NCBI RefSeq assembly: GCF_000189555.1
Contig: NC_017276.1
DNA: 64,000 nt
Source: Saccharolobus islandicus REY15A
Lineage (GTDB): Archaea; Thermoproteota; Thermoprotei_A; Sulfolobales; Sulfolobaceae
Reading direction: 5' to 3' (one strand)
Position 1 is the first letter of the stretch, and each line of letters opens with the position of its first letter. Of this stretch, positions 903 to 54,536 are shown one piece after another. Both the position numbers and the translations under genes were made by a program. The notes under the pieces are model-generated. The model saw nothing but the letters and a program-made list of their open reading frames with translations, did no database searches and was not told where the DNA came from.

Positions 903-3801
<2,899 letters not shown>

Positions 3802-3821
<20 letters not shown>

Positions 3822-4839
3822 TATATTTGGAGATAATTACATAATTCAAGTCGCAACGGAGGCAGAGAATTCAACTATATACAATAATAAAGTGGAAATA
3901 GACGATGAAGAGTTAAGAAATGTACTGAACTTAGCTTATAAGATAGCTAAAAATAATGAGGATGCGGCAGCGGAGAGGAGAGGCAAGGCAAAAAAGAAAA
4001 AGGGAGAGGAAGGGGAGACCACTACGTCAAACATAATTTTACCTTTAAGCGGAAATGACAAGAACCCTTGGACAGAGACGTTAAAATGTTATAATTTCCC
4101 CACGACTGTAGCTCTATCTGAGGTCTTTAAGAACTTCTCACAAGTGAAGGAGTGTGAAGAAGTAAGTGCGCCATCCTTTGTAAAGCCTGAGTTTTATAAG
4201 TTTGGAAGATCACCGGGAATGGTGGAGAGAACTAGAAGGGTGAAACTGGAAGTAGAGCCACATTACCTAATTATGGCTGCTGCTGGGTGGGTTTTAACTA
4301 GACTAGGAAAGGCTAAGGTTAGTGAGGGTGACTACGTAGGAGTAAACGTGTTTACTCCAACGAGGGGTATTCTCTACAGTTTGATTCAAAACGTTAACGG
4401 AATTGTACCCGGTATAAAGCCAGAGACTGCCTTTGGGCTTTGGATAGCTAGAAAGGTGGTAAGTAGTGTTACTAATCCCAACGTTAGTGTGGTGAGTATT
4501 TATACCATTTCTGATGCTGTTGGGCAGAACCCCACCACAATAAATGGAGGCTTCTCTATAGACTTAACTAAATTATTGGAAAAGAGGGATCTATTGAGTG
4601 AAAGGTTAGAGGCAATAGCTAGGAATGCATTAAGTATAAGTAGTAATATGAGAGAAAGGTATATCGTTTTAGCAAATTACATTTACGAGTACCTGACCGG
4701 ATCTAAAAGGCTCGAGGACTTGCTATATTTCGCCAATAGGGATTTAATTATGAACTTAAACTCCGATGATGGAAAGGTTAGAGATCTTAAGTTAATTTCA
4801 GCATATGTTAACGGAGAGTTAATAAGAGGAGAAGGATAG
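3802..4839 (+). CDS. cas8a2: Type I-A large subunit Cas8a2 (Csa4/CsaX)
   Basis: Position between cas3'' and cas6, as in Sulfolobales I-A operons; PSFVKPEFY motif. Confidence 0.8.
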
Positions 4840-5735
4840 TGCCATTAATTTTCAAGATAGGGTATAACGTTATCCCTCTACAAGACGTTATTTTGCCTAC
4901 TCCATCATCTAAGGTGTTAAAATACTTAATACAGAGTGGAAGATTACTCCCTTCGTTAAAGGACTTAATTACATCAAGGGATAAATACAAACCAATTTTT
5001 ATATCCCATCTCGGTTTCAACCAGAGGAGGATTTTTCAGACTAATGGAAACTTGAAGAGTATAACAAAGGGAAGCAGGCTTTCCTCAATAATAGCCTTTT
5101 CCACACAATCTAACGTTTTGCCTGAAGTTGCGGATGAGAGTATCTTCGAAACTGTTTATGGCAAATTTCACATAATGATTGAGAGTATAGAAATAGTGGA
5201 AGTTGAGAAGCTGAAGGAAGAGGTTGAAAAGCACATGAACGATAATATAAGAGTGAGGTTTGTTTCCCCTACATTGCTTTCGTCTAAGGTTTTACTTCCT
5301 CCTTCCCTTTCTGAAAGGTATAAGAAAATCGATGCGGGTTACTCAACTTTGCCATCAGTTGGCTTAATTGTTGCTTACGCTTATAATGTATATTGCAATT
5401 TGATTGGGAAGAAGGAAGTTGAGGTCAGAGCGTTTAAATTTGGCATTCTTTCTAATGCCTTATCTAGAATTATAGGTTATGATTTACATCCAGTTACCGT
5501 TGCCATTGGTGAGGATAGTAAGGGAAATTTAAGAAAAGCGAGGGGTGTTATGGGTTGGATTGAGTTCGACATTCCAGATAAGAGGTTGAAGAGGAGAGTT
5601 TTGAAGTATTTGTTAACATCTTCTTACTTGGGTATAGGAAGAAGTAGGGGTATTGGGTTTGGTGAGATCAGATTGGAGTTTAGGAAAATAGAGGAAAAAG
5701 AGGGTAAATATACTTCCTCAGACTTTAAAGGTTAA
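4839..5735 (+). CDS. cas6: Cas6 crRNA-processing endoribonuclease
   Basis: C-terminal G-loop YLGIGRSRGIGFG; VRFVSPTLL motif. Confidence 0.95.
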   Translation: MPLIFKIGYNVIPLQDVILPTPSSKVLKYLIQSGRLLPSLKDLITSRDKYKPIFISHLGFNQRRIFQTNGNLKSITKGSRLSSIIAFSTQSNVLPEVADESIFETVYGKFHIMIESIEIVEVEKLKEEVEKHMNDNIRVRFVSPTLLSSKVLLPPSLSERYKKIDAGYSTLPSVGLIVAYAYNVYCNLIGKKEVEVRAFKFGILSNALSRIIGYDLHPVTVAIGEDSKGNLRKARGVMGWIEFDIPDKRLKRRVLKYLLTSSYLGIGRSRGIGFGEIRLEFRKIEEKEGKYTSSDFKG

Positions 5736-5953
5736 GGTCAGCATAAGTCAACTCATAAGTTATTAGTTCACACGTTATCATTACCCAATTTTACCTTGCC
5801 CTTTATAACTTGAGCAAGTATAAACTACTGTTGGTTATTATACTAACGCAACGTTAATTATCTGATAGAAGTTTACGTTTTTCTCCTCCGCTTAAACAAT
5901 TTTCTTATCCCTCCGAATCCTTGACAAATACTTTTTATCAACCTATCTAATCT

Positions 5954-6035
5954 GGCTTCCTTATATAAAACATATTAGCGAGATCTATGTAATACAGACC
6001 TAATCGGCGTGCAGACCGTTGGTTTCCTTAGACAT
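5954..6035 (+). mobile_element. Degenerate ~80-bp remnant of an IS110-family non-coding end
   Basis: cttccttatataaaacatattag..agatct.tgtaatacaga aligns with the reverse complement of 46300-46377, the upstream non-coding end of the IS110 element. Confidence 0.65.
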
Positions 6036-6435
6036 CAACATGAGATTTCCTTTTTAGTGTAAAAAAAAAGAGATGAATAAAATATATAAAAGATCAAAGT
6101 AATAATATTTTTTGAAGAATAGATTGTATAAGCTAGAGTGGATCTAATTGTATACCACAAACTAAAGGGATCAAGCAGACTAATAGATTCCGCCCAAGTC
6201 CCCTTAAATTAATTTATACACTCCTATCATATATATACACTCTTTTTCATAATAGACCCAAAAGAGCAAAAAGGCAAGCCTAATATCTTAGAAATTATGG
6301 AATGCAACGATTTTCCAATAAATGCTCATCGAATAAGATGACTGCATCGGAACATCTCCCCTCCTATACATCAAATAAATATGTTCCTCTCATTTTGAAT
6401 ATTATTTAAAAACTGCATGACCTATACTAACTATT

Positions 6436-6459
6436 CTTTCAATTCTTTAGTTGATTAGC
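6436..6459 (-). CRISPR. Solitary CRISPR repeat-like unit (not an array)
   Basis: Minus strand reads GCTAATCAACTAAAGAATTGAAAG, a 22/24 match to the Sulfolobales repeat GCTAATCTACTATAGAATTGAAAG (recalled); no second repeat at spacer distance on either side. Confidence 0.8.
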
Positions 6460-6664
6460 ATGTTGTTGACTCTTTTCTTAGTTCGCCAGCTTTAAAGACA
6501 AAGTAAGATCCTAATCCCAAAAAACCTAAAGAAATAAGAATTACGAAGCTGTTATAGAGTAAATAGTATGAGTGATACTCTTGATTATAGCCAATACTCA
6601 CAGCCCCAATACTCCACCCTAATCCCCAAAGAATAAAGATTATACCAGAAACGAGATATAACAC
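6455..6664 (-). CDS. Small two-TM membrane protein (69 aa), function unknown
   Basis: Two hydrophobic stretches; GTG start; stop codon overlaps the 5' end of the solitary repeat. Confidence 0.55.
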   Translation of the reverse strand: MLYLVSGIIFILWGLGWSIGAVSIGYNQEYHSYYLLYNSFVILISLGFLGLGSYFVFKAGELRKESTTC

Positions 6665-6893
6665 CCATTTTTTATTGATAATCTTATATCTATATACTTC
6701 TGAGGTTTAATAAATTATTGCCTAGTTTAGGACAAAAACTTTTCCTTATATAGAGGGATTTGGATAACTTTAAGGAGTGTTAAGTCGTTATATCACTGGA
6801 ATTTTATATACATTTGGAGTTAATTTGTTCTAAACTATTTGATAAAAATTAAATCAGACAAGGAAATGAAAACTGTTGATCTCTTTCATTGAA

Positions 6894-7191
6894 GTGTTTA
6901 CCCGTGGCGTAACTTTTCCTTACTTTTAATTACTTCTAATTCCGCCACGGGCACCCCTCCTAAGGGATCATACACAGTCACCCTTAAATCATTGGGGCTA
7001 GTCGAGGGAAACACCACTACCCTCCCATCCACACTTTTATCATTCCCCAAACCTCGTGAGCAGTGCCCGTCATCAGTTAGGGAGATCATCAATAAAAACT
7101 ATTTCGGTAATACTATATAAACATAACTAATAAAAACGATATTTAGAAGTAATTAAAAATAACGAGTAGTTACGTAGAAGCGTTACAGTCT
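6894..7191 (-). mobile_element. Non-autonomous IS607/IS605-superfamily derivative (left end fused to tnpB 3' tail and right end)
   Basis: Both ends shared with 57443-57600; retains a TnpB-like C-terminal tail (VVFPSTSPNDLRVTVYDPLGGVPVAELEVIKSKEKLRHG); motif taattacttctaa occurs near both ends in inverted orientation. Confidence 0.6.
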
Positions 7192-7375
7192 CTTTTAAAT
7201 TTCATCTATTATCATAATATAGTATTTATTTTATATAATTTCTAAGTTTTTCTCTCAAATCGGAAGGAATTATAGCAACCTTGTAATTTCTACCCTTTAT
7301 ATTCATTTTTCCTACAAATACTAGGCAATAAAAACCGGTGAACAACCCCGCCCTTACGGACGTGGCATCTCCACC

Positions 7376-8581
7376 TCACGATGGAGATTTCCTGCTTCTT
7401 CCAAGAAACTTACTATACACCCCTTCTGAGAAGGGAATGTATAGCAGAGGTCCCCTGTCCACAGGCTCTAAGGGCAGTCCCGACCCCGCACGAAGAATAT
7501 TTAGAGAAGCATTATAGTCACGATCTACAGTCCAACCACATTTAGGACATACAAACACACGGTCAGCCAAAGTCAAGTCCTTCTTAACGTACCCACATTT
7601 AGCACACGTCTTAGAAGTATTCCTCGGATCTACTTTCACTACCCTCCTACCAGCTCTTTCAGCCTTGTAGGAGAGGTAGCTCATAAACTTAGAAAAGTTG
7701 GAGTGAAGGATATGCTTTCTCAAAACTTTACTTTCACTATCCTCAACCATCTTCTTCACATCAAGATCTTCCACATAGATCTTACCATACTGTTCTACGA
7801 GCCACGAAGTTACCTTATGAATATAATCACTCATCAAGTTCTTCACATGCTCGTGAAGCTTAGCTAGTTTTTCCCTGACCTTCTCGTAGTTTCTAGATCC
7901 CTTCTTCTTTCTAGATAATGATTGTTGCAAAATCTTTATCCTCCTCTCTACCTTATCAAAAACCTTGGGGTTCTCTACCACTACACCATCAGAGGTAGTT
8001 ACAAGTTTCTCCACTCCTAAGTCTATTCCAATCACTTTTCCAGTTTTTTCAAGAGGCTTCTTTTCCACCTCAACTTGAAAGATAGCATACCATCCAGTTA
8101 CACTCTTCTTTATTATAACTCCTTTTACCTCGCCTTCCAACGGTCTGTGAAAGAGAACTCTTATTTCTCCTATCTTTGAGAGGGTCAGCTTGTCTCCAAC
8201 TACCTTGAAACCAGATTGATTATAATTGATAGTCTTCATGATCTTCTTGTACCTCAGTTTCCCCACTTTCTTCCCTTTCTTCTTCAGTTCATGAAGAGCA
8301 TTGATGTTGTACCATAATTGGTTGTTAACCATTTGGAGAACCTTGGAGTAAACTAGATCCTTCCCTTCTATTTTCAAGTCTTTCAACATGTTTTGAGTAT
8401 CCTTAGGTGTTATCTTTTTCCCTTCTTTCCTCGCGTTGTTTACCACGTCTAGCAAGGCATTGTATACTTTAGCCTCAATTTGCATCACTTTGATGAGTTT
8501 CTCCTCTACTTCTCTCGTTGGGTAAATCTTGTACTTGAATGAGAGTTGGGTCTTGTCATTCTTCTCCTTGGCTCTCCACAT
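7376..8581 (-). CDS. tnpB: TnpB RNA-guided endonuclease (appears intact)
   Basis: RuvC motifs GIDLG, VEDL, DRDYNAS; Zn finger CAKC/CPKC. Confidence 0.95.
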   Translation of the reverse strand: MWRAKEKNDKTQLSFKYKIYPTREVEEKLIKVMQIEAKVYNALLDVVNNARKEGKKITPKDTQNMLKDLKIEGKDLVYSKVLQMVNNQLWYNINALHELKKKGKKVGKLRYKKIMKTINYNQSGFKVVGDKLTLSKIGEIRVLFHRPLEGEVKGVIIKKSVTGWYAIFQVEVEKKPLEKTGKVIGIDLGVEKLVTTSDGVVVENPKVFDKVERRIKILQQSLSRKKKGSRNYEKVREKLAKLHEHVKNLMSDYIHKVTSWLVEQYGKIYVEDLDVKKMVEDSESKVLRKHILHSNFSKFMSYLSYKAERAGRRVVKVDPRNTSKTCAKCGYVKKDLTLADRVFVCPKCGWTVDRDYNASLNILRAGSGLPLEPVDRGPLLYIPFSEGVYSKFLGRSRKSPS

Positions 8582-44009: not shown

Positions 44010-45237
44010 GAGAATGTCCGGAATGTAATTATCTGAATGAATATATAAATGGAATGATAAATATTAATATTATCAGAAGTATAAAACCTGGTTAATCTGG
44101 AAAAACTTGATCATGGAAAAATATCAAGTTAAGAAGATTTATTTGTCATGCATGGTGATGCTTGAGTGCGTGATGACGTTTCTTAGAGTTGAACTATTCG
44201 ACGTCCTGGAGGGGTTCTCCGTTGGACGGCTAGGAACATCCTGATATTGTAGAAGACTCCCAGGACGTGGAGGAAGGCTTCGTTCCTCCACACCGTGGTC
44301 CCATAGGGCCTCCAGAACTTGTACAGGAAGGTACCGAAGAACTCCACGTGGGCCCTCAGAGTCGTGAAAGGTTTCTCCATAGCTATGAGCTGGGTTGGGG
44401 AGGGCGAGAAACCCCTATCAGCTATCTTAATCCCCTTGAGCGGGGACTTAAATCTCTCATCCGAGAAGTTGGCAGGCTTCACCGTGATGGACCTTACGAA
44501 GAGGGAAGTGGAGATAACTATTAGGGCCTTCAGCCCGAAGTGAGAGACTCCCCTCTTCTTGGTCCACTTCCCCTTGAATCTCCTCTTAGTTCTCCCCAAG
44601 GAGAGCAGCTTCTTGGCCTTCTTCAAGTTACCTTCCTTCTTCTCCAGCTCTGCCTTCTCTCGGAAGGTCTCCACGCTCCTCTTCCCAAAAGGTAAGTCTA
44701 GAAGGAAGGAGTCAACGAGCCACGCAATGAAGTCCAGGAAGTGGGCACTGGCAGGGAGGTAACTGGGTAGGCACTTCTCCTCAAGCTTGAAGGAAATTTC
44801 CAGCAACTTCTTCCTTACTTCGTATACTCTTCCCACGAAATCGTGTAATGTGCTCTTGCCCACTTTCCTCCCAACGAACTACGCCACAACGACGTTCACG
44901 TTGACCATCTTTACCGCGTCTCTATAGGAACAGGAGTAGAGTACCATGACGATTAGTAACTTCAGGTAAATCAGAGTGCCTTCTCCTAGAACTCTTTCTA
45001 AATCTAGGGTGTCTAGCACGGGTTTGATATCCGTTAACCATTTTTCCCTCCACGGCATATCCTCTCTTGGGGGGAGAGAATAGTACACTAAGTTTGGGAT
45101 GCGTCTTAGTGTACGTGCCATGGTACTACTCTCTCCTCCCATAACTTAAGTATTACTACAATTTAATCCAAGATAATGCTAAGAATCAATTTATTCTCAA
45201 AAATTAAAATTCAGTTTTTTACATTCCGGACACTCTC
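44010..45237 (-). mobile_element. 1228-bp IS (IS5-like, ISC1234/ISC1212 type), copy 1; transposase has a nonsense codon
   Basis: 19-bp TIR GAGA(A/G)TGTCCGGAATGTAA; TGG>TAG at 44879-44881 relative to copy 2; flanks ACCT / TCGA. Confidence 0.85.
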
Positions 45238-46380
45238 TCGAGCATAGTCCACACTACTTACGCAAGTGATGAAACCTGCTTTACTCACTAGCGTCAAAGG
45301 GCTTATTATAATACAGCACAGCCCAAGTAATAACAGCCTAGCACAAGCAGTAATCAACTTCTTACCCCTAAGCCTACCCTTATGATCCTCATAAAAACGC
45401 TTAATAATAGGATTAACCTTGATAGCAGTCAAAGCTGCAAGATAGAAAGCCCTCCTCAAAACAGCATCACCCCTCTTAGAAATACCTCTCAATACAACAC
45501 TCTTACCACTAGACTCAACAACCGGGTCAAGACCACAATAAGCAACAAACCTCTTCTTATCACTAAAGCGCCTAATATCACCAACCCTAGCCAAAATAAT
45601 ACAACCCAAGGTTTTACCAATACCCGGAATAGTGAAAATCAAACTATCCTTGGGAACAAAATTCTCAAGCTCCTTCTCAATCTCCCTCTTCCTAGCTTCA
45701 AGCCTCTCCAACTCCTCCAAAAGAAACCTCAGACAACACTATACCATCTCCACTCCTCAAAACCTCCTCCAAATTCTTCCTGGACAGACTATCCCTATAG
45801 CCTAAAAGTACCAAATCCCTCCTCAGCCTATTCTTAACCCTAGCAATACTCCTAGTAACGAAATCCCACTGGCTAGTCAACTCCCTAGCATCACTTGTTG
45901 TAAACCCACTACCCATACTTACAACTATTTCTGCTAGCTTTTTAGCATCATTCTTATCACTCTTCTTACCCCTAAAATCCTTAAACTTCTTGAGAATAAA
46001 GGGATTAATAATCCTAACTCACCCATTAAGTACTTTGCTAGGTTAACGTGGTAAACTCCAGTACTTTCAATACCCACTTTGCAACCCTTAGGCAAAATCT
46101 TCCTTATCTCCTCAAACCCTTGCCTATCATTAGGAAACTCGTAGTATTTACCTTGAAAATACATGATTAATTTATCTTTTGATACATCTATTCCTGCAAC
46201 TGGGGCCTCCATGTATACTCACCCTTATGTTTTATTCGGGCTTCAAGCCCAACTTCCGGTTTGAATTGGAGGCTGCCAAGCTAACAACCGAGCTTTAAGC
46301 CCAAAGAGGTCAACGGCCTACACCCCAGTCAGATCTGTATTACACAGATCTGACTAATATGTTTTATATAAGGAAGTCAG
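45238..46380 (-). mobile_element. IS110-family element (ISC1190-like), frameshifted, downstream end cut by the 1228-bp IS
   Basis: GIDVSK and IESTG DEDD-RuvC motifs, IPGIG, SG.S..RGISKRGD, KRFY in three frames; ~170-bp non-coding end upstream of the ORF. Confidence 0.88.
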
Positions 46381-46436
46381 TTACGGAGACTGTTATTCAT
46401 GTTGTCGAGTAACTTATGATACTATTTCCTAAGTTA

Positions 46437-47141
46437 CTATTCCATCTTCTTTCCTACTACTAATACTCCTATTACTGCCTCACCCTCCTTCAGGTTAAGT
46501 GCCGTATTAAGAATATAGTCATTAAAACCGCCAACGGCACATATACCCAGGCTGAGTGCTGTAGCTACTAGATATAAGTTCTCCATGACTATTCCCGCAT
46601 CAATCAACGCAAACCTCGCACCTCTGTTACCATACTTTACCAAGACTTTCCAATACCTCGTCGTTAAGATGATAAGCAACGGAATTGTATTAATATCTGG
46701 AATAGAACTAACAATATTTGACTTAAGAATTTCTAACTGAATCTCGTTATTAAGCTTCTCTAGAGAGTGATACAACGGATTATAGTGATATACACCTATT
46801 TCCAAGTCGGATATAAAAGGAATTAAATACACCTCGGTCTCTGCTAAACCTCCTGCTGAAGGAAACATTCTATATATAATCTCACTGTCTTTCTTCCTAA
46901 CTCCGACAGAGTAATAAAGTAAGTCAGAAATCGTATGAATGTCTACCTTTTCTTCCTTAAACTTTCTCGTTGAAGACCTAGAAGTGATTACTCTCTGAAA
47001 GTTTTCTCTTATCTCCCTAGGTTTAGGTAGGGATATAACCTTAACCCCTTCATAAACTTTCGGATAATTATCTGGAATTAACGTAAAAGTAAAATTCTGT
47101 GTCTTTAGGTAAAATTCCTCAAATACATCCATCACGACCAC
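46437..47141 (-). CDS. SagB/McbC-type azoline dehydrogenase (FMN nitroreductase fold)
   Basis: SRSSTRKF, PSAGG, YHYNP, Lys-Tyr motif KYGNRG, DAG..MENLYL..GG. Confidence 0.9.
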   Translation of the reverse strand: MVVMDVFEEFYLKTQNFTFTLIPDNYPKVYEGVKVISLPKPREIRENFQRVITSRSSTRKFKEEKVDIHTISDLLYYSVGVRKKDSEIIYRMFPSAGGLAETEVYLIPFISDLEIGVYHYNPLYHSLEKLNNEIQLEILKSNIVSSIPDINTIPLLIILTTRYWKVLVKYGNRGARFALIDAGIVMENLYLVATALSLGICAVGGFNDYILNTALNLKEGEAVIGVLVVGKKME

Positions 47142-48440
47142 CTAAGGGAATGGTACCGGTTCTTCGGTAAATAGTTCAACCTCACTAAGTCCTATCTTCT
47201 TCCTTATAGTATAATATCTCTGGTGACCTAAGAAAGGCATGTCTGGAGTATGGGCTGGGGTTAGGTCAGGAACCATCACCCTAACCAGTTTTCCCCTACC
47301 TATATACTTCTCCACGTTAAAGTCCTTGTAAATTATCTTATATTGGCTTAGTACCTCTCCAATAAGTTCCTTGTAACTTAACGACTCTTCCCTTTCTAGC
47401 TCCTCGTAATTAATGCTTTTAAGGCTGCTTAGATAATTCAACAGAAAGTCTTTCCTAACATACGTGTAGTAAAGCGGGACTAACCAGAAATCAATTAAAA
47501 GATCTGGGGTGAGCTTCTTTGCAAGTTTAACCTCCTCTTCACTTATTTTACTGAAGGACGAAATTGACTGATAAACTTCGTAAATTGCTCTCCTTAACGC
47601 ATTTTCAACAGTTATATCTGCAGACGCACCTCCGACATAAAATCCGTTGATAAAACCTAAACAACCTATGACGAAAAGGCCCTTAAACTCGTTAATAAAG
47701 CGTAAGCAAATAACATCTTCGTTTTCAAGTACTTTATACTTCCTTTTTAGTCTCTCTGGGATCCGTATTCTCAAAGGGCTTATACGTGAAATCCATGAAA
47801 TATTTATTGCATCCCTCTCCAAGTATTCTAACAATCCATGAATAAACGCTTTTTCGAAATCTTCATGATATGATAATCCTCCGGTGGTAGAGTATGCTAT
47901 TAGATCTTCACCGGGCTTTATCAAATCTGTTAAGTAAATTATCTGCGAGGGTACGTAAACTGTTTTATTGTCTTTATAGGATGTAGCTCTGGTAAACGTT
48001 ATAACTGCCTCATCTGAATAGTCCTTGAAAAAGAATAACTTCTTGAGTTGTTCTCTTGAAAAGAACTTGTAACTCGTAGGGAGGATATCAAACTTCTCTT
48101 TTATTTCTGCAACTTTTCCGAAAATAGATGTGTTATCGTCAAAAAAAGTCATATAACCGTAAAATCTTTCTAAGAACTCTCCAATAGCACCCTTAAGACT
48201 CTCTTCCTCTTTTTCCCCCTTACCTCCTGCAGGCACGATATCTTTTAAGTACCTTAAAAGCGGTGTAAATTCAACAGGGAAATTTTTAGTATATCTAGCC
48301 TTAATATATTGAGTAGCTAATTCAGATTCTAACAGCTCATAGTTTACATAGTTTAAAAGTTTTGTAATTATAATATTATCATATTTTTCTATGGTATAAC
48401 CGAAAGCGGGTCCTAAAAATTCATTAATTAAATCTTGCAT
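47142..48440 (-). CDS. ycaO: YcaO cyclodehydratase (D protein)
   Basis: STTGGLS...GLLEYLERDA ATP-binding motifs, GASA, RAIYE; C-terminal PVPFP (PxPxP) typical of azoline-forming YcaOs. Confidence 0.92.
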   Translation of the reverse strand: MQDLINEFLGPAFGYTIEKYDNIIITKLLNYVNYELLESELATQYIKARYTKNFPVEFTPLLRYLKDIVPAGGKGEKEEESLKGAIGEFLERFYGYMTFFDDNTSIFGKVAEIKEKFDILPTSYKFFSREQLKKLFFFKDYSDEAVITFTRATSYKDNKTVYVPSQIIYLTDLIKPGEDLIAYSTTGGLSYHEDFEKAFIHGLLEYLERDAINISWISRISPLRIRIPERLKRKYKVLENEDVICLRFINEFKGLFVIGCLGFINGFYVGGASADITVENALRRAIYEVYQSISSFSKISEEEVKLAKKLTPDLLIDFWLVPLYYTYVRKDFLLNYLSSLKSINYEELEREESLSYKELIGEVLSQYKIIYKDFNVEKYIGRGKLVRVMVPDLTPAHTPDMPFLGHQRYYTIRKKIGLSEVELFTEEPVPFP

Positions 48441-49098
48441 TTAGGGCACCCTGGAATCTTTAATGGTGTATTTATTATTAATTCCCCCTCCATTACGTCT
48501 ACATATACTAATTTACCGCCAAATTTGTCGCTGTTAAAAAGCATCTTAGAAAATCCCAATAATAACAACTCTGAGAAATCACTTAGGGCAGGTGTAGCTT
48601 CTTTTATCATAACGCCATCAACTTTTACATCCAGAATTAACCTAGAATTCTTTAGCCATAAGTATATCTCATACATACAAGGGATGGCTTTCTTATTGAC
48701 AACGTATATGAAAAACCTATAGGGATCCATTATGTACGCTATAAGGACTTTTTTAAACCTTGTTAAGTCAATTGGCTGACTGACGAGAAAGTGAATACTA
48801 CTCGAGACAATTAATACCTTTTCGTTCTCTGGCACCTCTTCAATTGAATTAAAGACATTAACGAACTGCGGATAATGAAATCTTATTCTATTAATTACTG
48901 CATTTATTTTCTCCTCCTTTTCCGGTACTAACATTCTAATTTCTTTCAACTCCTCCGTGTTTAATGACATTAAGTTGTTAAATTCATCTTCACTAAACTC
49001 TATTAAACCTGAAGCTTCCGAATATGCAAGATACTTATTATAATTTTTAAATATTAAAAAAAAAAGGTGATATGGTTAGGGTAGGATGCATAGTACAT
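48428..49098 (-). CDS. E1/ThiF-like cyclodehydratase partner (C protein); true start probably ATG 49098, interrupted by an A10 homopolymer frameshift
   Basis: C-terminal KIPGCPKC; overlaps the ycaO start; ATG 49098 has a GAGGT SD and joins the 48970 frame if the T10 run is read as T11. Confidence 0.7.
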
Positions 49099-49102
49099 GA
49101 CC

Positions 49103-49210
49103 TCATTTTTTCCCCAACCAACAACCTATCCAACAGCCAATCCAACTAAAAACTACTTTATTATCTCTGCTTATTTCTATCGCCTTTCTATAGGTGTAAT
49201 CTATCTGCAC
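49103..49210 (-). CDS. Candidate RiPP precursor 1: (M)QIDYTYRKAIEISRDNKVVFSWIGCWIGCWLGKK (alternative ATG 49258 gives 51 aa)
   Basis: Hand-translated; directly upstream of and co-oriented with the C-YcaO-B genes; GCW repeats. Confidence 0.7.
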   Translation of the reverse strand: MQIDYTYRKAIEISRDNKVVFSWIGCWIGCWLGKK

Positions 49211-49310
49211 GTTCTTTCCCCATTCTTTTTCCCCACTTTCTAAAATAAAAATAAACATTATAGTTAAAACTTTTTAACAGTATACACTATTAATATTATT
49301 ATTAGAGTAT

Positions 49311-49973
49311 TTGAGTAGATTGATGAAGAGTCTTTTAACTTACTTTCTCAAACAATTAATATTTAGCGAACCGGCTGTTTACAATATTTTGTTAGGCTTT
49401 ATTATAGCCTTAATTATTTCAAGTACTACAAAATTTGATATTAGCTTAAATGTCTCTGAAAATCTAATACTTAGTATACTTTCAGTTGGGGTGAGTTTTA
49501 TATTTCTTTACAACTTTTCTTCTCTTCTATTCTTTATTAAGTTCGGAAGATTAAGATTGGGATTATACTTAATATTACTTTACCTTTCTGGGGAAATAGC
49601 AGCGCTATTTTACACGTTGTTGTTTATTATCTTATACCGCTTCCTTTTTAGTAATCCTGCGACTTTTAGTATTCCATATTTTCTCATTATGACCCTTTTA
49701 TTGTTTCTATTTTTAGTATCCATTTCCACGTTTTTATCGTTTATACTGACTAATGGAAGGCTGGACTGCCCTATAATTATGACAATTTACCCTATAATAG
49801 TTGTACCAACATTTATATTCTCCTTTTACAAGAGTGAGATAAATCCTCTTTGGATATTTGGGATGGTGAGTGAAAATATTTCAATTCCTCTTACCTTAGG
49901 CATTATTTTCTTGGTATCTCCAATCATTTTCATATATTTGCTAATATTTTTGATAAAAAAGTTTCTAAGCTAG
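49311..49973 (+). CDS. ABC-2-like permease / membrane protein
   Basis: Six hydrophobic segments; inside the RiPP locus. Confidence 0.7.
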   Translation: MSRLMKSLLTYFLKQLIFSEPAVYNILLGFIIALIISSTTKFDISLNVSENLILSILSVGVSFIFLYNFSSLLFFIKFGRLRLGLYLILLYLSGEIAALFYTLLFIILYRFLFSNPATFSIPYFLIMTLLLFLFLVSISTFLSFILTNGRLDCPIIMTIYPIIVVPTFIFSFYKSEINPLWIFGMVSENISIPLTLGIIFLVSPIIFIYLLIFLIKKFLS

Positions 49974-49974
49974 C

Positions 49975-50076
49975 TCATATTTTCTTGCAGCAACACCAGC
50001 AACCAAACCAGCAACCAAGCATTATCGGATTAATTTCGGTTAGATCTTTTGATTTTCTATTGGTACTTACTATCAC
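49975..50076 (-). CDS. Candidate RiPP precursor 2: MIVSTNRKSKDLTEINPIMLGCWFGCWCCCKKI
   Basis: Hand-translated; GGTGA SD 9 nt upstream of GTG; GCWxGCW core plus CCC. Confidence 0.75.
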   Translation of the reverse strand: MIVSTNRKSKDLTEINPIMLGCWFGCWCCCKKI

Positions 50077-50187
50077 CAATTTTTATCACCTTTACTACGT
50101 TAGTAAATTATAATTAAAAAGAATTTGCTTGGTTAATGAGTTTTAACTCTATTCATCGTTTTTATTACTTTTTACGGGATTTAAATT

Positions 50188-50925
50188 ATGGAATTAGAGA
50201 AATCTATGATAAAGAGGTTTTCGTTCTCACCAGCTGCAATATCTTATTTACTCGGAATGATGTTACTGGACTCATTAGGACTTTATTTTGCATTAAATAG
50301 TATTAGAAACATAGATGCAGGAATAATATGGTACAGTGTTGCGATATTACTGTTGGTAGCTAGCTTATCAACAGGTTTTAGCATTACATTAATCTACCAG
50401 TCCTCTGCATTAGCTTACTATGTAAGATTTAGTAGACTTAAAATGTCTAACTACATCCTGAGTTTATTCATAGGTTCACTGATCTCTGCGACTATATACT
50501 CGGTAACTTTCGCAGCTCTCATTACACCATTAATAACTAAACTAACACTTGACCATTTTTACGAAATTATCAGGCTTGATAATATTTTACCCTTCATAGC
50601 CTCAGCTCTAATCTCAAGTCTCTTCATTCTATCCTTAACCTTTACAATCATTGCAACATTACTGGTTAAGGTTGGGGCTAAAGCGTCAAACTATGCTTAC
50701 TACATCTTCTTTGTGTTGTTAGCAATTTCAGACCTCTCGCCTTCAGCCTCATCGTCACTTAACCCCTTCTACGAAGCTGAAAATATAATTTCGTACTCCC
50801 TCATCCACGATAGCATAAGTATTTACTCCATTGAAGTAGCATTACTGGCGATAGTCTTATTGTTATTAGGGAATTGGATTTTGAAGAAGATCAAGGCACT
50901 AAGACTGGAAGAGGTTGTGTGGTAA
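50188..50925 (+). CDS. ABC-2-like permease
   Basis: Six TM segments; stop overlaps the ATPase start. Confidence 0.75.
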   Translation: MELEKSMIKRFSFSPAAISYLLGMMLLDSLGLYFALNSIRNIDAGIIWYSVAILLLVASLSTGFSITLIYQSSALAYYVRFSRLKMSNYILSLFIGSLISATIYSVTFAALITPLITKLTLDHFYEIIRLDNILPFIASALISSLFILSLTFTIIATLLVKVGAKASNYAYYIFFVLLAISDLSPSASSSLNPFYEAENIISYSLIHDSISIYSIEVALLAIVLLLLGNWILKKIKALRLEEVVW

Positions 50926-51557
50926 TGTTGGAGATTAAAGATTTATCTATCAATTTCGAGGACTTTACGATCTTAAAAAACATTAACTTAAAACTTGAAA
51001 ATCAAGTGTGTGTAATACTGGGTCCTAATGGTTCCGGAAAAACTACCTTGCTAAGAGCTATATCTGGAATAATTCCATACAAGGGTTCGATAAAGATAAA
51101 CGGTAAGGAGGTTAGGAGTGCTAAGAGGATTTTAGAATACTCCACAAATCTTCAAGAGGTATACACTATAGGTAACTCCGCATGGGATACTGCGAAAATA
51201 ATAGCGGAGATTAAGGGCGGAGATTTAAAAGAATTCACAAACATCTTAAGCTATCTGGACGTAGACAGAAAGGTGATACACAAGCCTATTTATAAGATGT
51301 CTACTGGACAGAGGAGTTTAGTATCGTTAGCATTGGCACTTTTTATGAAGCCTCAAATAGTTACTATCGACGAGCCGATAGAGAATGTGGACGTCAATAG
51401 GAGGGATAGGGTGATATCGTTATTACGTGAAAGAGTGAATGAGGGTTTAATTGTAACACACCAGAAGGAGTTAATCAAGATGTTAGAGAATAATAAAAAG
51501 GAAGTGATAATTTATACGATAGTTAACGGTGAGCTTGTTGAAGGTGATAAAATGTAA
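50925..51557 (+). CDS. ABC transporter ATP-binding protein (start ATG 50925)
   Basis: GPNGSGKT, MSTGQ signature, IDEP, TH. Confidence 0.9.
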   Translation: MLEIKDLSINFEDFTILKNINLKLENQVCVILGPNGSGKTTLLRAISGIIPYKGSIKINGKEVRSAKRILEYSTNLQEVYTIGNSAWDTAKIIAEIKGGDLKEFTNILSYLDVDRKVIHKPIYKMSTGQRSLVSLALALFMKPQIVTIDEPIENVDVNRRDRVISLLRERVNEGLIVTHQKELIKMLENNKKEVIIYTIVNGELVEGDKM

Positions 51558-51651
51558 TAGGAAAGCGAGGGGAAGAAAAGATGTATATATTGCATGCTGG
51601 GTTGGTTGCTGGTTCAGTTGTTGGACTTCGAGTGAGGTTAAAAAATCTTAA
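51544..51651 (+). CDS. Candidate RiPP precursor 3: MIKCNRKARGRKDVYIACWVGCWFSCWTSSEVKKS
   Basis: Hand-translated; shares NRK leader motif, xCW repeats and C-terminal KK with the other two; overlaps the ORF-track ORF 51581 in another frame. Confidence 0.6.
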   Translation: MIKCNRKARGRKDVYIACWVGCWFSCWTSSEVKKS

Positions 51652-52306
51652 CTATAATCTAAGTTTAAATCCATTGTCAGGAAAATTAGTAAAGGGTGAA
51701 AGAATTATTAGTAAAGAAATAGATGTTCAGAAATCCGTAGAAATAAGCGAGAAGCTTTATCATCGTGTTATGCTTAATGCATCAAAGACAATATTAGATT
51801 TCATAGGGCTTGGAAGTCTTACTACTTTTTTATTAACAAGCCTTATCTCAAACCCTCTTACTTTTAACATTAGCATAATAGTCTTTTCCACCATATACGT
51901 GTTTATCTCTTGGAGGATGAGTAGGTTTGTATATCCATTTATTAAGACATTTAACTCTCACAAATCTTCGTTAATTGTCAAAAAATTTCCCTTACTTGTT
52001 AAGCTAACCTACACACTTTCGCTCATAATACTTTACGTCCTATTTCTACTCTCATTTCGAATTCACTTCCTATCTAATTTACCAATTTTTCTTGTAGGTG
52101 CATACATATCTTTCATTGGGAGTCAGTTAATTACTACCATAAGATTTCTGAAAGAGAACTCTATAGAGTACGTTCTAGTTACATCTTATATTCTTTCAGG
52201 AGTAGCTATCATAATATCTCCTTTCCATATAATAACCCTCTTAATCCCGCCACTATCAGCCTTTTTGTACAAATTGATAAGGGGGCTGAGGAATGGAGCT
52301 AGATAA
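51581..52306 (+). CDS. Polytopic membrane protein (possible immunity factor); real start may be downstream, e.g. ATG 51770
   Basis: About six TM segments in the C-terminal 180 aa; 5' part overlaps candidate precursor 3. Confidence 0.6.
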   Translation: MYILHAGLVAGSVVGLRVRLKNLNYNLSLNPLSGKLVKGERIISKEIDVQKSVEISEKLYHRVMLNASKTILDFIGLGSLTTFLLTSLISNPLTFNISIIVFSTIYVFISWRMSRFVYPFIKTFNSHKSSLIVKKFPLLVKLTYTLSLIILYVLFLLSFRIHFLSNLPIFLVGAYISFIGSQLITTIRFLKENSIEYVLVTSYILSGVAIIISPFHIITLLIPPLSAFLYKLIRGLRNGAR

Positions 52307-52589
52307 ATTAATAAAACTGTTGAAGGATAATAAGGAGTTAAATGTTGGAGTTAGGTTAGGGATTCTACTAGGTCTTTATTATACTAGGTCTGCATGGTTT
52401 AAGGAATTGTTAGAAGCCACCAGGTTAAATAAGGCTGAACTGTATCAGCATCTTAAGATCTTGCATAAGAGTGGATACGTAGAGATTAAATATATCCCTA
52501 CAGTTGAAGGTAAGAGGTTGAAGGTTTTTATAACTAAAAAGGGCGATGAATTAATAAAGCAAGTCGTTGAACTATTAAGGGAGAAGTAA
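52293..52589 (+). CDS. Winged-HTH transcriptional regulator (ArsR/MarR-like)
   Basis: FKELLEAT.LNKAELYQHLKIL..GYV...ITKKG pattern. Confidence 0.85.
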   Translation: MELDKLIKLLKDNKELNVGVRLGILLGLYYTRSAWFKELLEATRLNKAELYQHLKILHKSGYVEIKYIPTVEGKRLKVFITKKGDELIKQVVELLREK

Positions 52590-52730
52590 TTTTATCGTTT
52601 TAAGGAGTTTTAACCTTATGGGAGCAAAGGAAGAGGAAAGCCCTGCCTTTTAGGGCTAAAGGAAAGTCAGTGTAGATCTAAACGGTAACTTTTCTAAAAA
52701 TTTTAATAATTAATTATCTTATTTCAATCC

Positions 52731-53308
52731 ATAATTAAGATAGAAGAAATTACAAAGTACTTTGGAAAAAGAAAAGTTCTTGATAATGTCACTTTCACAG
52801 TTAATGATGGGAAATCGTTGGATTTGTTGGACTGAATGGTGCAGGGAAAACCACGACTATCAGGATCATTGTTGGAACAATAGAACCCAACTCAGGCGAT
52901 GTATTTATAGACGGTTATAGTATAACAAAAGGAACGCTTCAAAAGAAGTAGGCTGGGTACCAGAACTACCGATATTCGAATTAGATGCTAGAGCGCTTGA
53001 CTATTTCATCTACATAGCAGGATATTACGGTATAGGGAATAAAGAAGCTAAGGAAATGGGAATGAAGCTATTTGAAGAAGTGGGACTGTTGGGTAGGGAG
53101 AATGACAATCTCAAAAGTTATTCCCAGGGTATGAAAAAAAGGTTTGCCCTCGCTGTTTCCCTCATATCTAATCCAAAAAATTTTGTGTTCGACGAAGTAC
53201 TTAACGGCTTGGATCCACAAGGGATACAGTTCTTTAGAAATTTAGCACTTAAGATGAAAAAGAAGGGAAGGCTGTACTCTTCTCCTCTCATATCCTCTCT
53301 GAAGTCGA
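52731..53308 (+). pseudogene. ABC ATPase pseudogene (frameshifts; cut by IS)
   Basis: GLNGAGKTT, YSQGMKKR and FDE in different frames; SH-loop region abuts IS copy 2. Confidence 0.8.
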
Positions 53309-54536
53309 GAGAATGTCCGGAATGTAATTATCTGAATGAATATATAAATGGAATGATAAATATTAATATTATCAGAAGTATAAAACCTGGTTAATCTGGA
53401 AAAACTTGATCATGGAAAAATATCAAGTTAAGAAGATTTATTTGTCATGCATGGTGATGCTTGAGTGCGTGATGACGTTTCTTAGAGTTGAACTATTCGA
53501 CGTCCTGGAGGGGTTCTCCGTTGGACGGCTAGGAACATCCTGATATTGTAGAAGACTCCCAGGACGTGGAGGAAGGCTTCGTTCCTCCACACCGTGGTCC
53601 CATAGGGCCTCCAGAACTTGTACAGGAAGGTACCGAAGAACTCCACGTGGGCCCTCAGAGTCGTGAAAGGTTTCTCCATAGCTATGAGCTGGGTTGGGGA
53701 GGGCGAGAAACCCCTGTCAGCTATCTTAATCCCCTTGAGCGGGGACTTAAATCTCTCATCCGAGAAGTTGGCAGGCTTCACCGTGATGGACCTTACGAAG
53801 AGGGAAGTGGAGATAACTATTAGGGCCTTCAGCCCGAAGTGAGAGACTCCCCTCTTCTTGGTCCACTTCCCCTTGAATCTCCTCTTAGTTCTCCCCAAGG
53901 AGAGCAGCTTCTTGGCCTTCTTCAAGTTACCTTCCTTCTTCTCCAGCTCTGCCTTCTCTCGGAAGGTCTCCACGCTCCTCTTCCCAAAAGGTAAGTCTAG
54001 AAGGAAGGAGTCAACGAGCCACGCAATGAAGTCCAGGAAGTGGGCACTGGCAGGGAGGTAACTGGGTAGGCACTTCTCCTCAAGCTTGAAGGAAATTTCC
54101 AGCAACTTCTTCCTTACTTCGTATACTCTTCCCACGAAATCGTGTAATGTGCTCTTGCCCACTTTCCTCCCAACGAACCACGCCACAACGACGTTCACGT
54201 TGACCATCTTTACCGCGTCTCTATAGGAACAGGAGTAGAGTACCATGACGATTAGTAACTTCAGGTAAATCAGAGTGCCTTCTCCTAGAACTCTTTCTAA
54301 ATCTAGGGTGTCTAGCACGGGTTTGATATCCGTTAACCATTTTTCCCTCCACGGCATATCCTCTCTTGGGGGGAGAGAATAGTACACTAAGTTTGGGATG
54401 CGTCTTAGTGTACGTGCCATGGTACTACTCTCTCCTCCCATAACTTAAGTATTACTACAATTTAATCCAAGATAATGCTAAGAATCAATTTATTCTCAAA
54501 AATTAAAATTCAGTTTTTTACATTCCGGACACTCTC
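53309..54536 (-). mobile_element. 1228-bp IS (IS5-like), copy 2; intact 319-aa transposase (53482-54441)
   Basis: Same 19-bp TIRs; flanked by 4-bp TSD TCGA; near-identical to 44010-45237. Confidence 0.9.

What the first reader, a model, noticed from the sequence alone, without database searches (positions are those of the whole stretch)
48971..49098. A10/U10 slippery tract hides the probable leader-binding N-terminus of the cyclodehydratase C protein
Seen: ATG 49098 (SD GAGGT, right after P1) reads MYYASYPNHITFFF then UAA across a U10 run (A10 at 49056-49065). Reading the run as 11 nt gives MYYASYPNHITFFFLIFKNYNKYLAYSEASGLIEFSEDEFNNLMSLNTEELKEIRML.., continuous with the 180-aa ORF, for 223 aa total. 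The -1 frame has no stops and no alternative start before 48970. Inference: the added beta-beta-beta/helix segment resembles a RiPP recognition element. Three readings are possible: a phase-variable ON/OFF switch by slipped-strand mispairing; a programmed -1 frameshift on U_UUU_UUU before a stop (programmed -1 frameshifting is established for S. solfataricus fucA1); or a sequencing error or recent inactivation.
Basis: partly seen in the sequence, partly recalled or inferred. Interest (0 to 1): 0.75.

Follow-up and report, generated by a model that had tools for sequence, protein, structure and literature searches.

The report
Unstable T-run switches archaeal peptide-maturase gene
In the model archaeon Sulfolobus islandicus REY15A, a run of ten T's near the start of a peptide-modifying gene puts it out of frame, and near-identical sequenced cultures carry 9 to 18 T's, so the gene looks switched on or off by repeat-length changes, as in bacterial phase variation.

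Summary
A T10 run (window 49056-49065, minus strand) cuts a conserved 40-residue N-terminus off the 180-aa ORF next to the YcaO gene. The window is S. islandicus REY15A.

Orthologs in four genera start M-x3-L-[TK]-[IV]-SPFF, which is ATG 49091 in the third frame. That frame is restored by T9/T12/T15/18, not T11.

Public assemblies 100% identical over up to 6.5 kb carry T9, T10 (commonest), T11, T12, T14, T15, T17 and T18. Hot-spring relatives carry T7, T8, T10 and T14; other genera only T6. An unrelated A9 run is A12 in one of the same samples.

Best reading: a recently arisen, hypermutable homopolymer acting as a slipped-strand ON/OFF switch, with the reference strain OFF. It is probably a by-product of general tract instability rather than an evolved switch. 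Programmed frameshifting and a one-off assembly error are not supported.

A fold search matches the protein to E1-like cyclodehydratase partners (McbB, LynD). The claim that the N-terminus is a leader-binding RRE remains unproven.

The parts
49056..49065 (-). T10 homopolymer (A10 on the + strand) in codons 9-12 of the C-protein gene; the length-variable site
   Evidence: Read directly. Lengths 9, 10, 11, 12 and 18 seen in DNA of otherwise identical loci. Lengths 14, 15 and 17 implied by proteins P0013, P0015 and P0017.
49089..49091 (-). ATG, ancestral start of the C protein (MHPTLTISPFF...). In frame with the body when the tract is 9, 12, 15 or 18.
   Evidence: Orthologs start M-x3-L-[TK]-[IV]-SPFF. 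Alleles P0012, P0011, P0015 and P0001. SD spacing of 8 nt.
49096..49098 (-). In frame with the body when the tract is 11, 14 or 17. Seen only in the REY15A lineage among the sequences read.
   Evidence: Alleles P0010, P0013 and P0017. Hot-spring relatives have no ATG in this frame (P0020 starts at a TTG). Only 1 nt from the SD.
49100..49104 (-). Shine-Dalgarno-like GAGGT, overlapping the stop codon of precursor P1
   Evidence: Sequence. GGTGA sits at the same place upstream of the ATG in orthologs.
49047..49091 (-). Stub left in the ancestral frame at T10: MHPTLTISPFFFNI then a stop
   Evidence: Part of ORF 49047..49145.
48428..49075 (-). Body frame of the C protein (E1-like partner of YcaO). 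Open from 49075. Annotated only from ATG 48970 as 180 aa; the stop overlaps the YcaO start by 13 nt.
   Evidence: Foldseek on the model of the intact T9 allele: McbB E = 3e-7, LynD E = 5e-5, then MoeB/ThiF/MccB. No Pfam or NCBIfam hit.
49103..49258 (-). Precursor peptide P1 (...DNKVVFSWIGCWIGCWLGKK)
   Evidence: Conserved in Stygiolobus and Acidianus loci. Same motif as the S. acidocaldarius precursor listed by Cox 2015.
47142..48440 (-). YcaO / SagD-type cyclodehydratase (D protein), 432 aa, intact
   Evidence: PF02624 E = 6e-39. TIGR03604 at 222.8 bits against a cutoff of 219.25.
46437..47141 (-). SagB-type FMN dehydrogenase (B protein), intact
   Evidence: PF00881. TIGR03605 E = 3e-45.
49975..50079 (-). 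Second candidate precursor (...NPIMLGCWFGCWCCCKKI)
   Evidence: conserved in hot-spring relatives and Acidianus.
51529..51651 (+). Third candidate precursor (...VYIACWVGCWFSCWTSSEVKKS)
   Evidence: conserved in Stygiolobus, Acidianus and Sulfurisphaera.
49311..52589 (+). Divergent operon: two membrane proteins, an ABC ATPase, a third membrane protein and a winged-helix regulator
   Evidence: The same gene order is found in Stygiolobus, Acidianus and Sulfurisphaera.

Best explanation
The gene at 48428-49091 (minus strand) encodes the roughly 220-aa E1-like 'C' partner of a YcaO cyclodehydratase. It belongs to the thermoacidophisin-type azole-peptide cluster of S. islandicus REY15A.

How the tract arose (inferred from comparison). 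In this lineage two substitutions, TTC to TTT and TCA to TTA, fused a short T6 run in the conserved motif S-P-F-F-S into a run of 9 or more T.

How it works. Such a run gains and loses units during DNA replication by slipped-strand mispairing. The organism has no MutS/MutL, and indels dominate its resequencing spectrum. Three states result:
- Tract 9, 12, 15 or 18: full-length protein from the ancestral ATG 49091 (ON).
- Tract 11, 14 or 17: full-length protein with a substituted first 11 residues from the lineage-specific, poorly placed ATG 49098 (probably weak ON).
- Tract 10 (and, by frame arithmetic, 13 or 16, lengths not observed): both upstream frames stop just after the tract (OFF). At most a 180-aa protein remains, lacking the first 40 residues.

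The reference genome and most lab stocks are OFF, so they are expected not to mature the three Cys/Trp-rich precursors.

Shown versus inferred. Shown: the frames, the allele series, the conservation of the N-terminus, and the E1-like fold. Inferred: that the changes are in DNA rather than RNA, that the N-terminus binds the leader, and that OFF abolishes maturation. The instability looks generic to long A/T runs, so the switch is more likely an accident of sequence drift than an evolved contingency locus.
For: - Allele series. Among sequences otherwise identical to the window over up to 6.5 kb: T10 x10, T11 x7, T12 x4, T9 x3, T18 x1 in DNA. T14, T15 and T17 are implied by proteins.
- Specificity within the loci. 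The tract is the only indel in all 25 loci, and 11 A/T runs of 6-7 nt in the same loci never vary.
- Neighbouring SRA accessions differ: SRR33004410 T9...429 T11...430 T10; SRR27475872 T11...873 T18.
- Assembled alleles as long as T14-T18, in contigs that are otherwise exact, point to fixed DNA alleles rather than read noise.
- Natural populations. The CCT haplotype carries T8, T10 (out of frame) and T14. The CCC haplotype with only T7 is invariant in 7 of 7 sequences.
- Other genera carry T6 in a single in-frame ORF.
- The N-terminal 40 residues are conserved, with dN/dS about 0.11 against about 0.22 for the rest.
- Fold: McbB and LynD are the top PDB matches.
- Literature: REY15A wild-type resequencing found 19 indels (13 insertions) against 8 substitutions, with indels unchanged in the endoMS knockout (PMC7736090).
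- Control: an intergenic A9 run is A12 in SRR33004429, as the only difference in 5.6 kb.
Against: - I could not learn whether the SRA runs are DNA or RNA libraries, so part of the series could reflect transcript heterogeneity or library stutter.
- The control tract also varies, so the behaviour is not specific to this gene.
- The long tract is absent from other genera, which argues against selection for switching.
- No lineage tracing shows reversibility.
- T13 and T16 were not seen, though they would be hidden in the 180-aa class, of which only 10 loci were read.
- No expression or product data exist for any state.
Confidence: 0.65

Rival explanations
1. Transcriptional slippage. The DNA is stably T10. 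RNA polymerase stutters on the run and makes mRNAs with 9, 11, 12 or more U, so some full-length protein is made from the 'broken' gene. On this view the length series in public assemblies comes from RNA-seq runs.
For: - Runs of 9 or more A/T are the classic slippage substrate in bacteria (Baranov 2005, PMC1088944; review PMC5009743, listed).
- Expansions dominate the series, as expected for stuttering.
- Logan assembles every kind of SRA run, and the library type is unknown to me.
Against: - A stuttering ladder should leave T10 or T11 as the most abundant species, yet T14, T15, T17 and T18 were assembled as the contig path.
- T9, T11 and T18 sit in contigs of about 6.98 kb that run across both divergent operons up to the flanking IS copies.
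- The YcaO gene has low read counts in a published REY15A transcriptome, assuming SiRe_0824 is this gene, which I inferred and did not verify.
- JGI contigs that I take to be metagenomic DNA (library type not checked) show T8, T10 and T14.
- An intergenic A9 run is A12 in the same sample.
- Slippage could still operate on top of DNA variation.
Confidence: 0.15
2. Sequencing, library or assembly artefact. The real tract is one fixed length and the variants come from homopolymer errors or arbitrary bubble resolution by the assembler.
For: - Homopolymers of 10 or more are error-prone.
- Plus-or-minus-one variants (T9, T11) make up 10 of the 15 variant loci whose DNA was read (11 of the 18 variant contigs).
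- An unrelated A9 run also differs in one of the same runs.
- The YNP site 19 assemblies are of visibly lower quality, with a split YcaO.
Against: - Changes of +2 to +8, and +3 at the control, are far outside normal Illumina error for a consensus path.
- Everything else in 25 loci is identical, including 23 of 23 copies of a T7 run.
- Variant lengths recur across unrelated accession series.
- T14 occurs in an independent JGI metagenome.
Confidence: 0.1
3. Programmed ribosomal frameshifting on the U run: -1 from the ATG 49098 frame on U_UUU_UUU before UAA, or +1 from the ATG 49091 frame.
For: - The heptamer U UUU UUU followed by UAA is present in the 49098 frame.
- -1 frameshifting is established for S. 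solfataricus fucA1 (PMC1616953).
Against: - No ortholog keeps a frameshift. All are single ORFs with T6-T8.
- There is no stable downstream structure (MFE -8.6 kcal/mol, z = +1.0).
- The SD is 1 nt from ATG 49098.
- In-frame alleles of the same strain exist, so the shift is not a fixed feature of the gene.
Confidence: 0.04
4. Plain decay. The cluster is being lost in REY15A and the T10 frameshift is simply the first pseudogenising hit, with no functional switching.
For: - T10 is the commonest state (36 contigs).
- The cluster lies between IS copies.
- The Sulfurisphaera ortholog cluster is clearly decaying: YcaO is cut by an IS and the precursor has lost its Cys residues.
- Expression in the laboratory appears low.
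Against: - No second lesion is present anywhere. The precursor, YcaO, SagB and transport genes are intact, and the 40 hidden codons have no stop.
- About a third of the contigs on record carry an in-frame length.
Confidence: 0.06

Closest known systems
Homopolymeric-tract phase variation in organisms without MutS/MutL, e.g. the 7C tract of glpK in Mycobacterium tuberculosis (10.1101/717272; PMC10334774)
   Same: A mononucleotide run inside the coding region gains and loses units, which toggles the frame. The host relies on NucS/EndoMS, which does not correct indel loops; REY15A indels are unchanged in the endoMS knockout.
   Different: This case is in an archaeon and in a RiPP maturase. No phenotype or switching rate has been measured, and the run is longer with a much wider range (9-18).
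Translational phase variation with start codons in two frames, as in the Haemophilus influenzae lic loci (from my own knowledge, not checked here)
   Same: Repeat number near the 5' end places the body in frame with one of two ATGs or with neither, giving strong, weak and off states.
   Different: Those loci use tetranucleotide repeats with conserved, evidently selected tracts. Here the run is mononucleotide, recently arisen, and the second ATG was seen only in this lineage.
McbB of the microcin B17 synthetase McbBCD (PDB 6GRI, 6GOS) and the E1-like half of LynD (4V1T)
   Same: Best structural matches of the intact allele (E = 3e-7 and 5e-5). Like them, the gene sits directly upstream of a YcaO and beside a SagB-type dehydrogenase and the precursor. 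In those enzymes the N-terminal domain holds the leader peptide (established knowledge).
   Different: No sequence similarity is detectable. The protein is only about 220 aa. [quoted passage not shown] The N-terminal domain is not confidently modelled.
Thermoacidophisin TOMM clusters (Cox, Doroghazi and Mitchell 2015, PMC4603692)
   Same: The REY15A D protein F0NHA0 is listed in this class. The listed S. acidocaldarius precursor ends ...VLFSWFGCWFGCWFGGGG, the same motif as P1.
   Different: That survey does not mention the truncated C protein, the tract, or the two further precursor candidates.
fucA1 -1 programmed frameshift of S. solfataricus (PMC1616953)
   Same: A Sulfolobales gene split into two frames at a slippery run.
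   Different: fucA1 keeps its split as a fixed feature and was shown to frameshift. Here orthologs and sister alleles are in frame and no stimulator is present.

Membership tests
E1-like 'C' protein of azoline-forming YcaO cyclodehydratases (McbB/SagC/BalhC type) | Encoded next to, and co-oriented with, a TOMM-type YcaO (D), a SagB dehydrogenase and a Cys-rich precursor | tested here: met
   The C stop overlaps the YcaO start by 13 nt. YcaO matches TIGR03604 and SagB matches TIGR03605. The same order is found in four genera.
E1-like 'C' protein of azoline-forming YcaO cyclodehydratases (McbB/SagC/BalhC type) | ThiF/MoeB (E1)-like fold | tested here: met
   Foldseek on the model of the T9 allele: McbB E = 3e-7, LynD E = 5e-5, MoeB/ThiF/MccB about 1e-2. 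Model pLDDT is 64 overall and 73-90 for residues 61-130.
E1-like 'C' protein of azoline-forming YcaO cyclodehydratases (McbB/SagC/BalhC type) | Match to a curated sequence model of C proteins | tested here: not met
   No Pfam or NCBIfam hit at E <= 0.1-1. No PDB sequence hit. Only 2 clusters at 50% identity among 1.84 billion proteins.
RiPP recognition element (PqqD-like winged helix, three strands then three helices) | Strand-strand-strand-helix-helix-helix topology at the N-terminus | tested here: inconclusive
   The full-length model gives E12-16, E19-24, E28-32, H34-40, H46-52, but at pLDDT 31-52. The 88-residue fragment gives three strands and one helix at pLDDT 59 and has no PDB match (best E = 0.58). 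No PF05402 hit.
RiPP recognition element (PqqD-like winged helix, three strands then three helices) | Binds the leader peptide | not testable with these tools
   Needs binding assays or a co-fold of C, D and the leader.
Simple-sequence-repeat phase-variable (contingency) locus | Repeat within the 5' coding region whose unit number sets the reading frame | tested here: met
Simple-sequence-repeat phase-variable (contingency) locus | Length polymorphism among otherwise identical genomes | tested here: met
   Lengths 9-18 in 25 loci that are 99.8-100% identical apart from the tract. Caveat: the library type of the runs is unknown.
Simple-sequence-repeat phase-variable (contingency) locus | High, reversible switching rate | not testable with these tools
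   Both contraction (T9) and expansion are seen relative to the commonest T10, but no pedigree or rate is available.
Simple-sequence-repeat phase-variable (contingency) locus | Tract maintained by selection (conserved among relatives) | tested here: not met
   Stygiolobus, Acidianus and Sulfurisphaera have CCT TTT TTC, i.e. T6. Many hot-spring relatives have a stable T7. A control A9 run is also unstable.
Programmed ribosomal frameshift site | Frameshift conserved in orthologs | tested here: not met
   All orthologs are single ORFs.
Programmed ribosomal frameshift site | Downstream stimulatory RNA structure | tested here: not met
   The 96 nt after the tract fold at -8.6 kcal/mol, z = +1.0, and 172 of 200 shuffles fold at least as well.

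The most novel reading that the evidence does not exclude
This is a true archaeal contingency locus: a heritable, reversible three-state switch built from one T-run and two start codons in different frames (ancestral N-terminus ON, substitute N-terminus ON or weak, OFF). On this reading it lets subpopulations of S. islandicus turn production of an azole-containing peptide (thermoacidophisin) on and off, and the second ATG at 49098 arose because it widens the ON fraction. It would be among the first documented cases of repeat-mediated phase variation in Archaea, and it would explain hidden heterogeneity among stocks of a major model strain.
Probability: 0.2. Interest if true: 0.7.

Novelty: new member of a known kind. 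Interest (0 to 1): 0.5.

Why it matters
- REY15A and its derivative E233S are workhorse genetic strains. If their stocks differ silently at this tract, some can mature the cluster's peptides and most cannot. That matters for anyone looking for the so far uncharacterised thermoacidophisin product or comparing strains.
- Homopolymer phase variation has been predicted for Archaea in silico (PMC2831843, PMC3315296). My literature searches found no worked archaeal example.
- The locus gives a ready, naturally occurring allele series for measuring tract instability in an organism without MutS/MutL.
- The annotation needs correcting. The real protein is about 220 aa and starts at ATG 49091; the 180-aa entry in the databases is a truncation.

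Tried and rejected
- Two genome-contig scans for orthologous loci (alignment A1, then the window protein) returned nothing. I used exact-protein look-ups instead.
- The first metagenome DNA pattern found nothing because relatives read AATTTTT after the tract where the pattern required AATATTT, and most also carry CCC-T7, too short for its eight-T run. A relaxed pattern gave 4 loci.
- Pfam, NCBIfam and PDB sequence searches found nothing for the C protein. An exhaustive profile search found only one further cluster, so a deeper alignment for folding was not possible.
- Folding the 88-residue N-terminal part alone gave a low-confidence model with no PDB matches. This says nothing either way about an RRE.
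- The control look-up around the A9 run was collapsed by the tool to 3 places, of which 2 covered the run. The control therefore rests on one variant.
- The three A/T runs of 8 nt in the window are not in solid genes, so no coding control was possible.
- Literature searches did not reveal what kind of libraries the SRA runs are, nor any report of this tract. The indel positions of Ahmad 2020 are not in the held supplement.
- I did not build a repaired version of the window's gene. All full-length sequences used are natural alleles returned by the databases.

Full report
**Where the window comes from.** The window is S. islandicus REY15A, CP002425.1 positions 744001-808000. Two fetched pieces of that record are exact substrings of the window.

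**What is in the sequence.**
- On the minus strand there are ten T at 49056-49065.
- Three frames meet at the run.
  - The frame of the annotated 180-aa ORF is open from 49075 (PYHLFFLIFKNYNKYLAYSEASGLIEFSEDEFNNL-M...). It has no ATG/GTG/TTG before ATG 48970.
- The run is not surprising by composition. Shuffles give 2.8 such runs per window.

**Gene context.**
- Downstream and co-oriented lie a YcaO of the TOMM SagD type (PF02624; TIGR03604 above its cutoff) and a SagB dehydrogenase (TIGR03605).
- Upstream lies the precursor ...VVFSWIGCWIGCWLGKK.
- A divergent operon carries three membrane proteins, an ABC ATPase and a winged-helix regulator.
- The same layout is found in Stygiolobus caldivivus, Acidianus infernus and Sulfurisphaera ohwakuensis.
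- Cox et al. 2015 list the REY15A D protein in their 'thermoacidophisin' class and note that its C proteins resemble no others.

**The hidden N-terminus is real, but its start is not the one proposed.**
- A search with the unaltered open frame found homologs, the full-length ones of 215-223 aa (one 167-aa hit is cut at its C-terminal end).
- All orthologs begin M-x3-L-[TK]-[IV]-S-P-F-F-[ST]-[IV]-[FY]-[KR]-N. They keep 17 invariant positions in the 40 residues upstream of the Met at 48970.
- That start is the ATG 49091 frame.
- GAGGT at 49100-49104 lies 8 nt from ATG 49091 and 1 nt from ATG 49098. Orthologs have GGTGA at the matching distance.
- Against hot-spring relatives, codons 12-40 have dN/dS about 0.11, compared with about 0.22 for codons 41-220.

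**The allele series.** The 90%-identity cluster around the window's protein holds proteins identical apart from the tract.

| Tract length | Protein start | Protein | Length | Contigs on record |
|---|---|---|---|---|
| T9 | MHPTLTISPFF-LIF | P0012 | 220 aa | 3 |
| T12 | one more F | P0011 | 221 aa | 4 |
| T15 | two more F | P0015 | 222 aa | 1 |
| T18 | three more F | P0001 | 223 aa | 1 |
| T14 | one more F | P0013 | 224 aa | 1 |
| T17 | two more F | P0017 | 225 aa | 1 |
| T10 | 180-aa truncation | P0009 | 180 aa | 36 |

- I fetched DNA for 25 loci: T10 x10, T11 x7, T12 x4, T9 x3 and T18 x1.
- All align to the window at 99.8-100% over 0.9-6.5 kb. The tract is the only indel, and three loci have one substitution each.
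- Eleven other A/T runs of 6-7 nt never vary, for example T7 in 23 of 23 loci.
- Runs with neighbouring accession numbers carry different lengths.
- So two of the three length classes give a full-length protein, each from its own ATG. The reference carries the third class.

**Natural populations and evolution of the tract.**
- Hot-spring relatives (90% identical protein) read TCA-CCC-T7-CA in 7 sequences, all in frame.
- With CCT instead of CCC they read T8 (in frame), T10 (out of frame; two assemblies of Yellowstone site 19) and T14 (in frame, SPFFFFS).
- Stygiolobus, Acidianus and Sulfurisphaera read CCT TTT TTC, i.e. T6.
- The long run is therefore derived. TTC to TTT, and in REY15A TCA to TTA (Ser to Leu), merged short runs. 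Variability appears once the run reaches about 8.
- ATG 49098 is absent from the hot-spring relatives. Their product in that frame had to be called from a TTG.

**Is the instability special to this gene?** Probably not.
- The only other run of 9 or more in the window is an intergenic A9 at 6061-6069.
- It is A12 in SRR33004429, the run whose C-gene tract is T11. That is the sole difference in 5.6 kb.
- REY15A lacks MutS/MutL. In published resequencing of the wild type, indels (13 insertions, 6 deletions) outnumbered substitutions (8) and were not increased by deleting endoMS (PMC7736090).

**DNA or RNA?** I could not determine the library type of the SRA runs.
- For DNA-level alleles:
  - Long expansions were assembled as the contig path.
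  - The T9, T11 and T18 alleles each occur in a contig of about 6.98 kb that runs from one flanking IS copy to the other.
  - The YcaO gene has low transcript counts, if SiRe_0824 is this gene, which I inferred.
  - JGI contigs that I take to be metagenomic DNA carry T8, T10 and T14.
  - The intergenic control tract also changed.
- Transcriptional slippage on a U10 run remains plausible as an additional source of in-frame mRNA from T10 DNA.

**Frameshifting.** No ortholog retains a shift. The 96 nt after the run have no structure (z = +1.0). In-frame sister alleles exist. I rate programmed frameshifting as unlikely.

**What the protein is.**
- It has no Pfam, NCBIfam or PDB sequence match.
- The family has only two 50%-identity clusters in 1.84 billion proteins.
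- An AlphaFold model of the natural T9 allele (pLDDT 64; core 73-90) matches McbB of the microcin B17 synthetase (E = 3e-7) and LynD (E = 5e-5), then MoeB, ThiF and MccB. The E1-like C-protein assignment is thus supported by fold.
- In the model, residues 12-52 form three strands and two helices, as an RRE would begin, but at pLDDT 31-52.
- The first 88 residues folded alone reach pLDDT 59, show three strands and only one helix, and match nothing in the PDB.
- The RRE reading is reasonable by analogy with McbB and LynD but is not demonstrated.
- The 180-aa form would lack all three strands and the first helix.

**Verdict.**
- The most likely account is a recently created, hypermutable T-run that toggles the C protein between a full-length and a truncated form. 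REY15A's reference state is OFF.
- It works like bacterial homopolymer phase variation. It fails the one test that would mark it as an evolved contingency locus, namely conservation of the tract.
All intact forms used are natural alleles from the databases.

Noticed in passing
window 49975-50079 (-) and 51529-51651 (+), besides P1 at 49103-49258 (-): Two further small ORFs carry the same [GA]CW-x-[GS]CW motif as the precursor (...NPIMLGCWFGCWCCCKKI and ...VYIACWVGCWFSCWTSSEVKKS). Both are conserved outside REY15A: the first in hot-spring relatives and Acidianus, the second also in Stygiolobus and Sulfurisphaera. The cluster therefore probably has three substrates. The third overlaps the junction of the ABC ATPase gene and the next membrane-protein gene.
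   Followed up: partly
window 6061-6069: The intergenic A9 run downstream of cas6 is A12 in the assembly of SRR33004429, as the only difference in 5.6 kb. Long A/T runs seem generally unstable in REY15A-derived data.
   Followed up: partly
window 44107-46353 and 53335-54441: The single-copy TOMM island (about 46353-53335) lies between two copies, in the same orientation, of one IS. Its transposase is 319 aa and intact at 53482-54441 but split into 226 + 87 aa at 44183-45142. A further transposase-like element sits at 45211-46212. Public contigs end at these repeats. Recombination between the copies could delete the cluster.
   Followed up: no
L041/L042 (Sulfurisphaera ohwakuensis) 5870-8240: The orthologous cluster is decaying. 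YcaO is cut after 166 aa by a DDE transposase insertion, and the P1-like peptide has lost its cysteines (...AVFSWIFRWIVGYK).
   Followed up: no
L027 (Yellowstone site 19 metagenome) 3678-5548: In the contig whose tract is T10 and out of frame, YcaO is also split (317 + 141 aa) and SagB is reduced to 49 aa. This is either a decayed copy or a low-quality assembly.
   Followed up: no
window 1302-5735: Type I-A CRISPR-Cas genes are present: a Cas3-like helicase, CsaX (3802-4839) and Cas6 (4839-5735). CsaX of exactly this sequence is on record on 140 contigs, which shows how often this strain has been sequenced.
   Followed up: no
window 48428-48440: The stop of the C gene overlaps the YcaO start by 13 nt. 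Premature termination at the tract may therefore also lower YcaO translation through loss of coupling.
   Followed up: no
PMC7736090 supplement: Many SiRe_08xx genes, including SiRe_0824 annotated YcaO, rise together when EndoMS is overexpressed in REY15A. A whole chromosomal neighbourhood around this cluster may be co-regulated.
   Followed up: no
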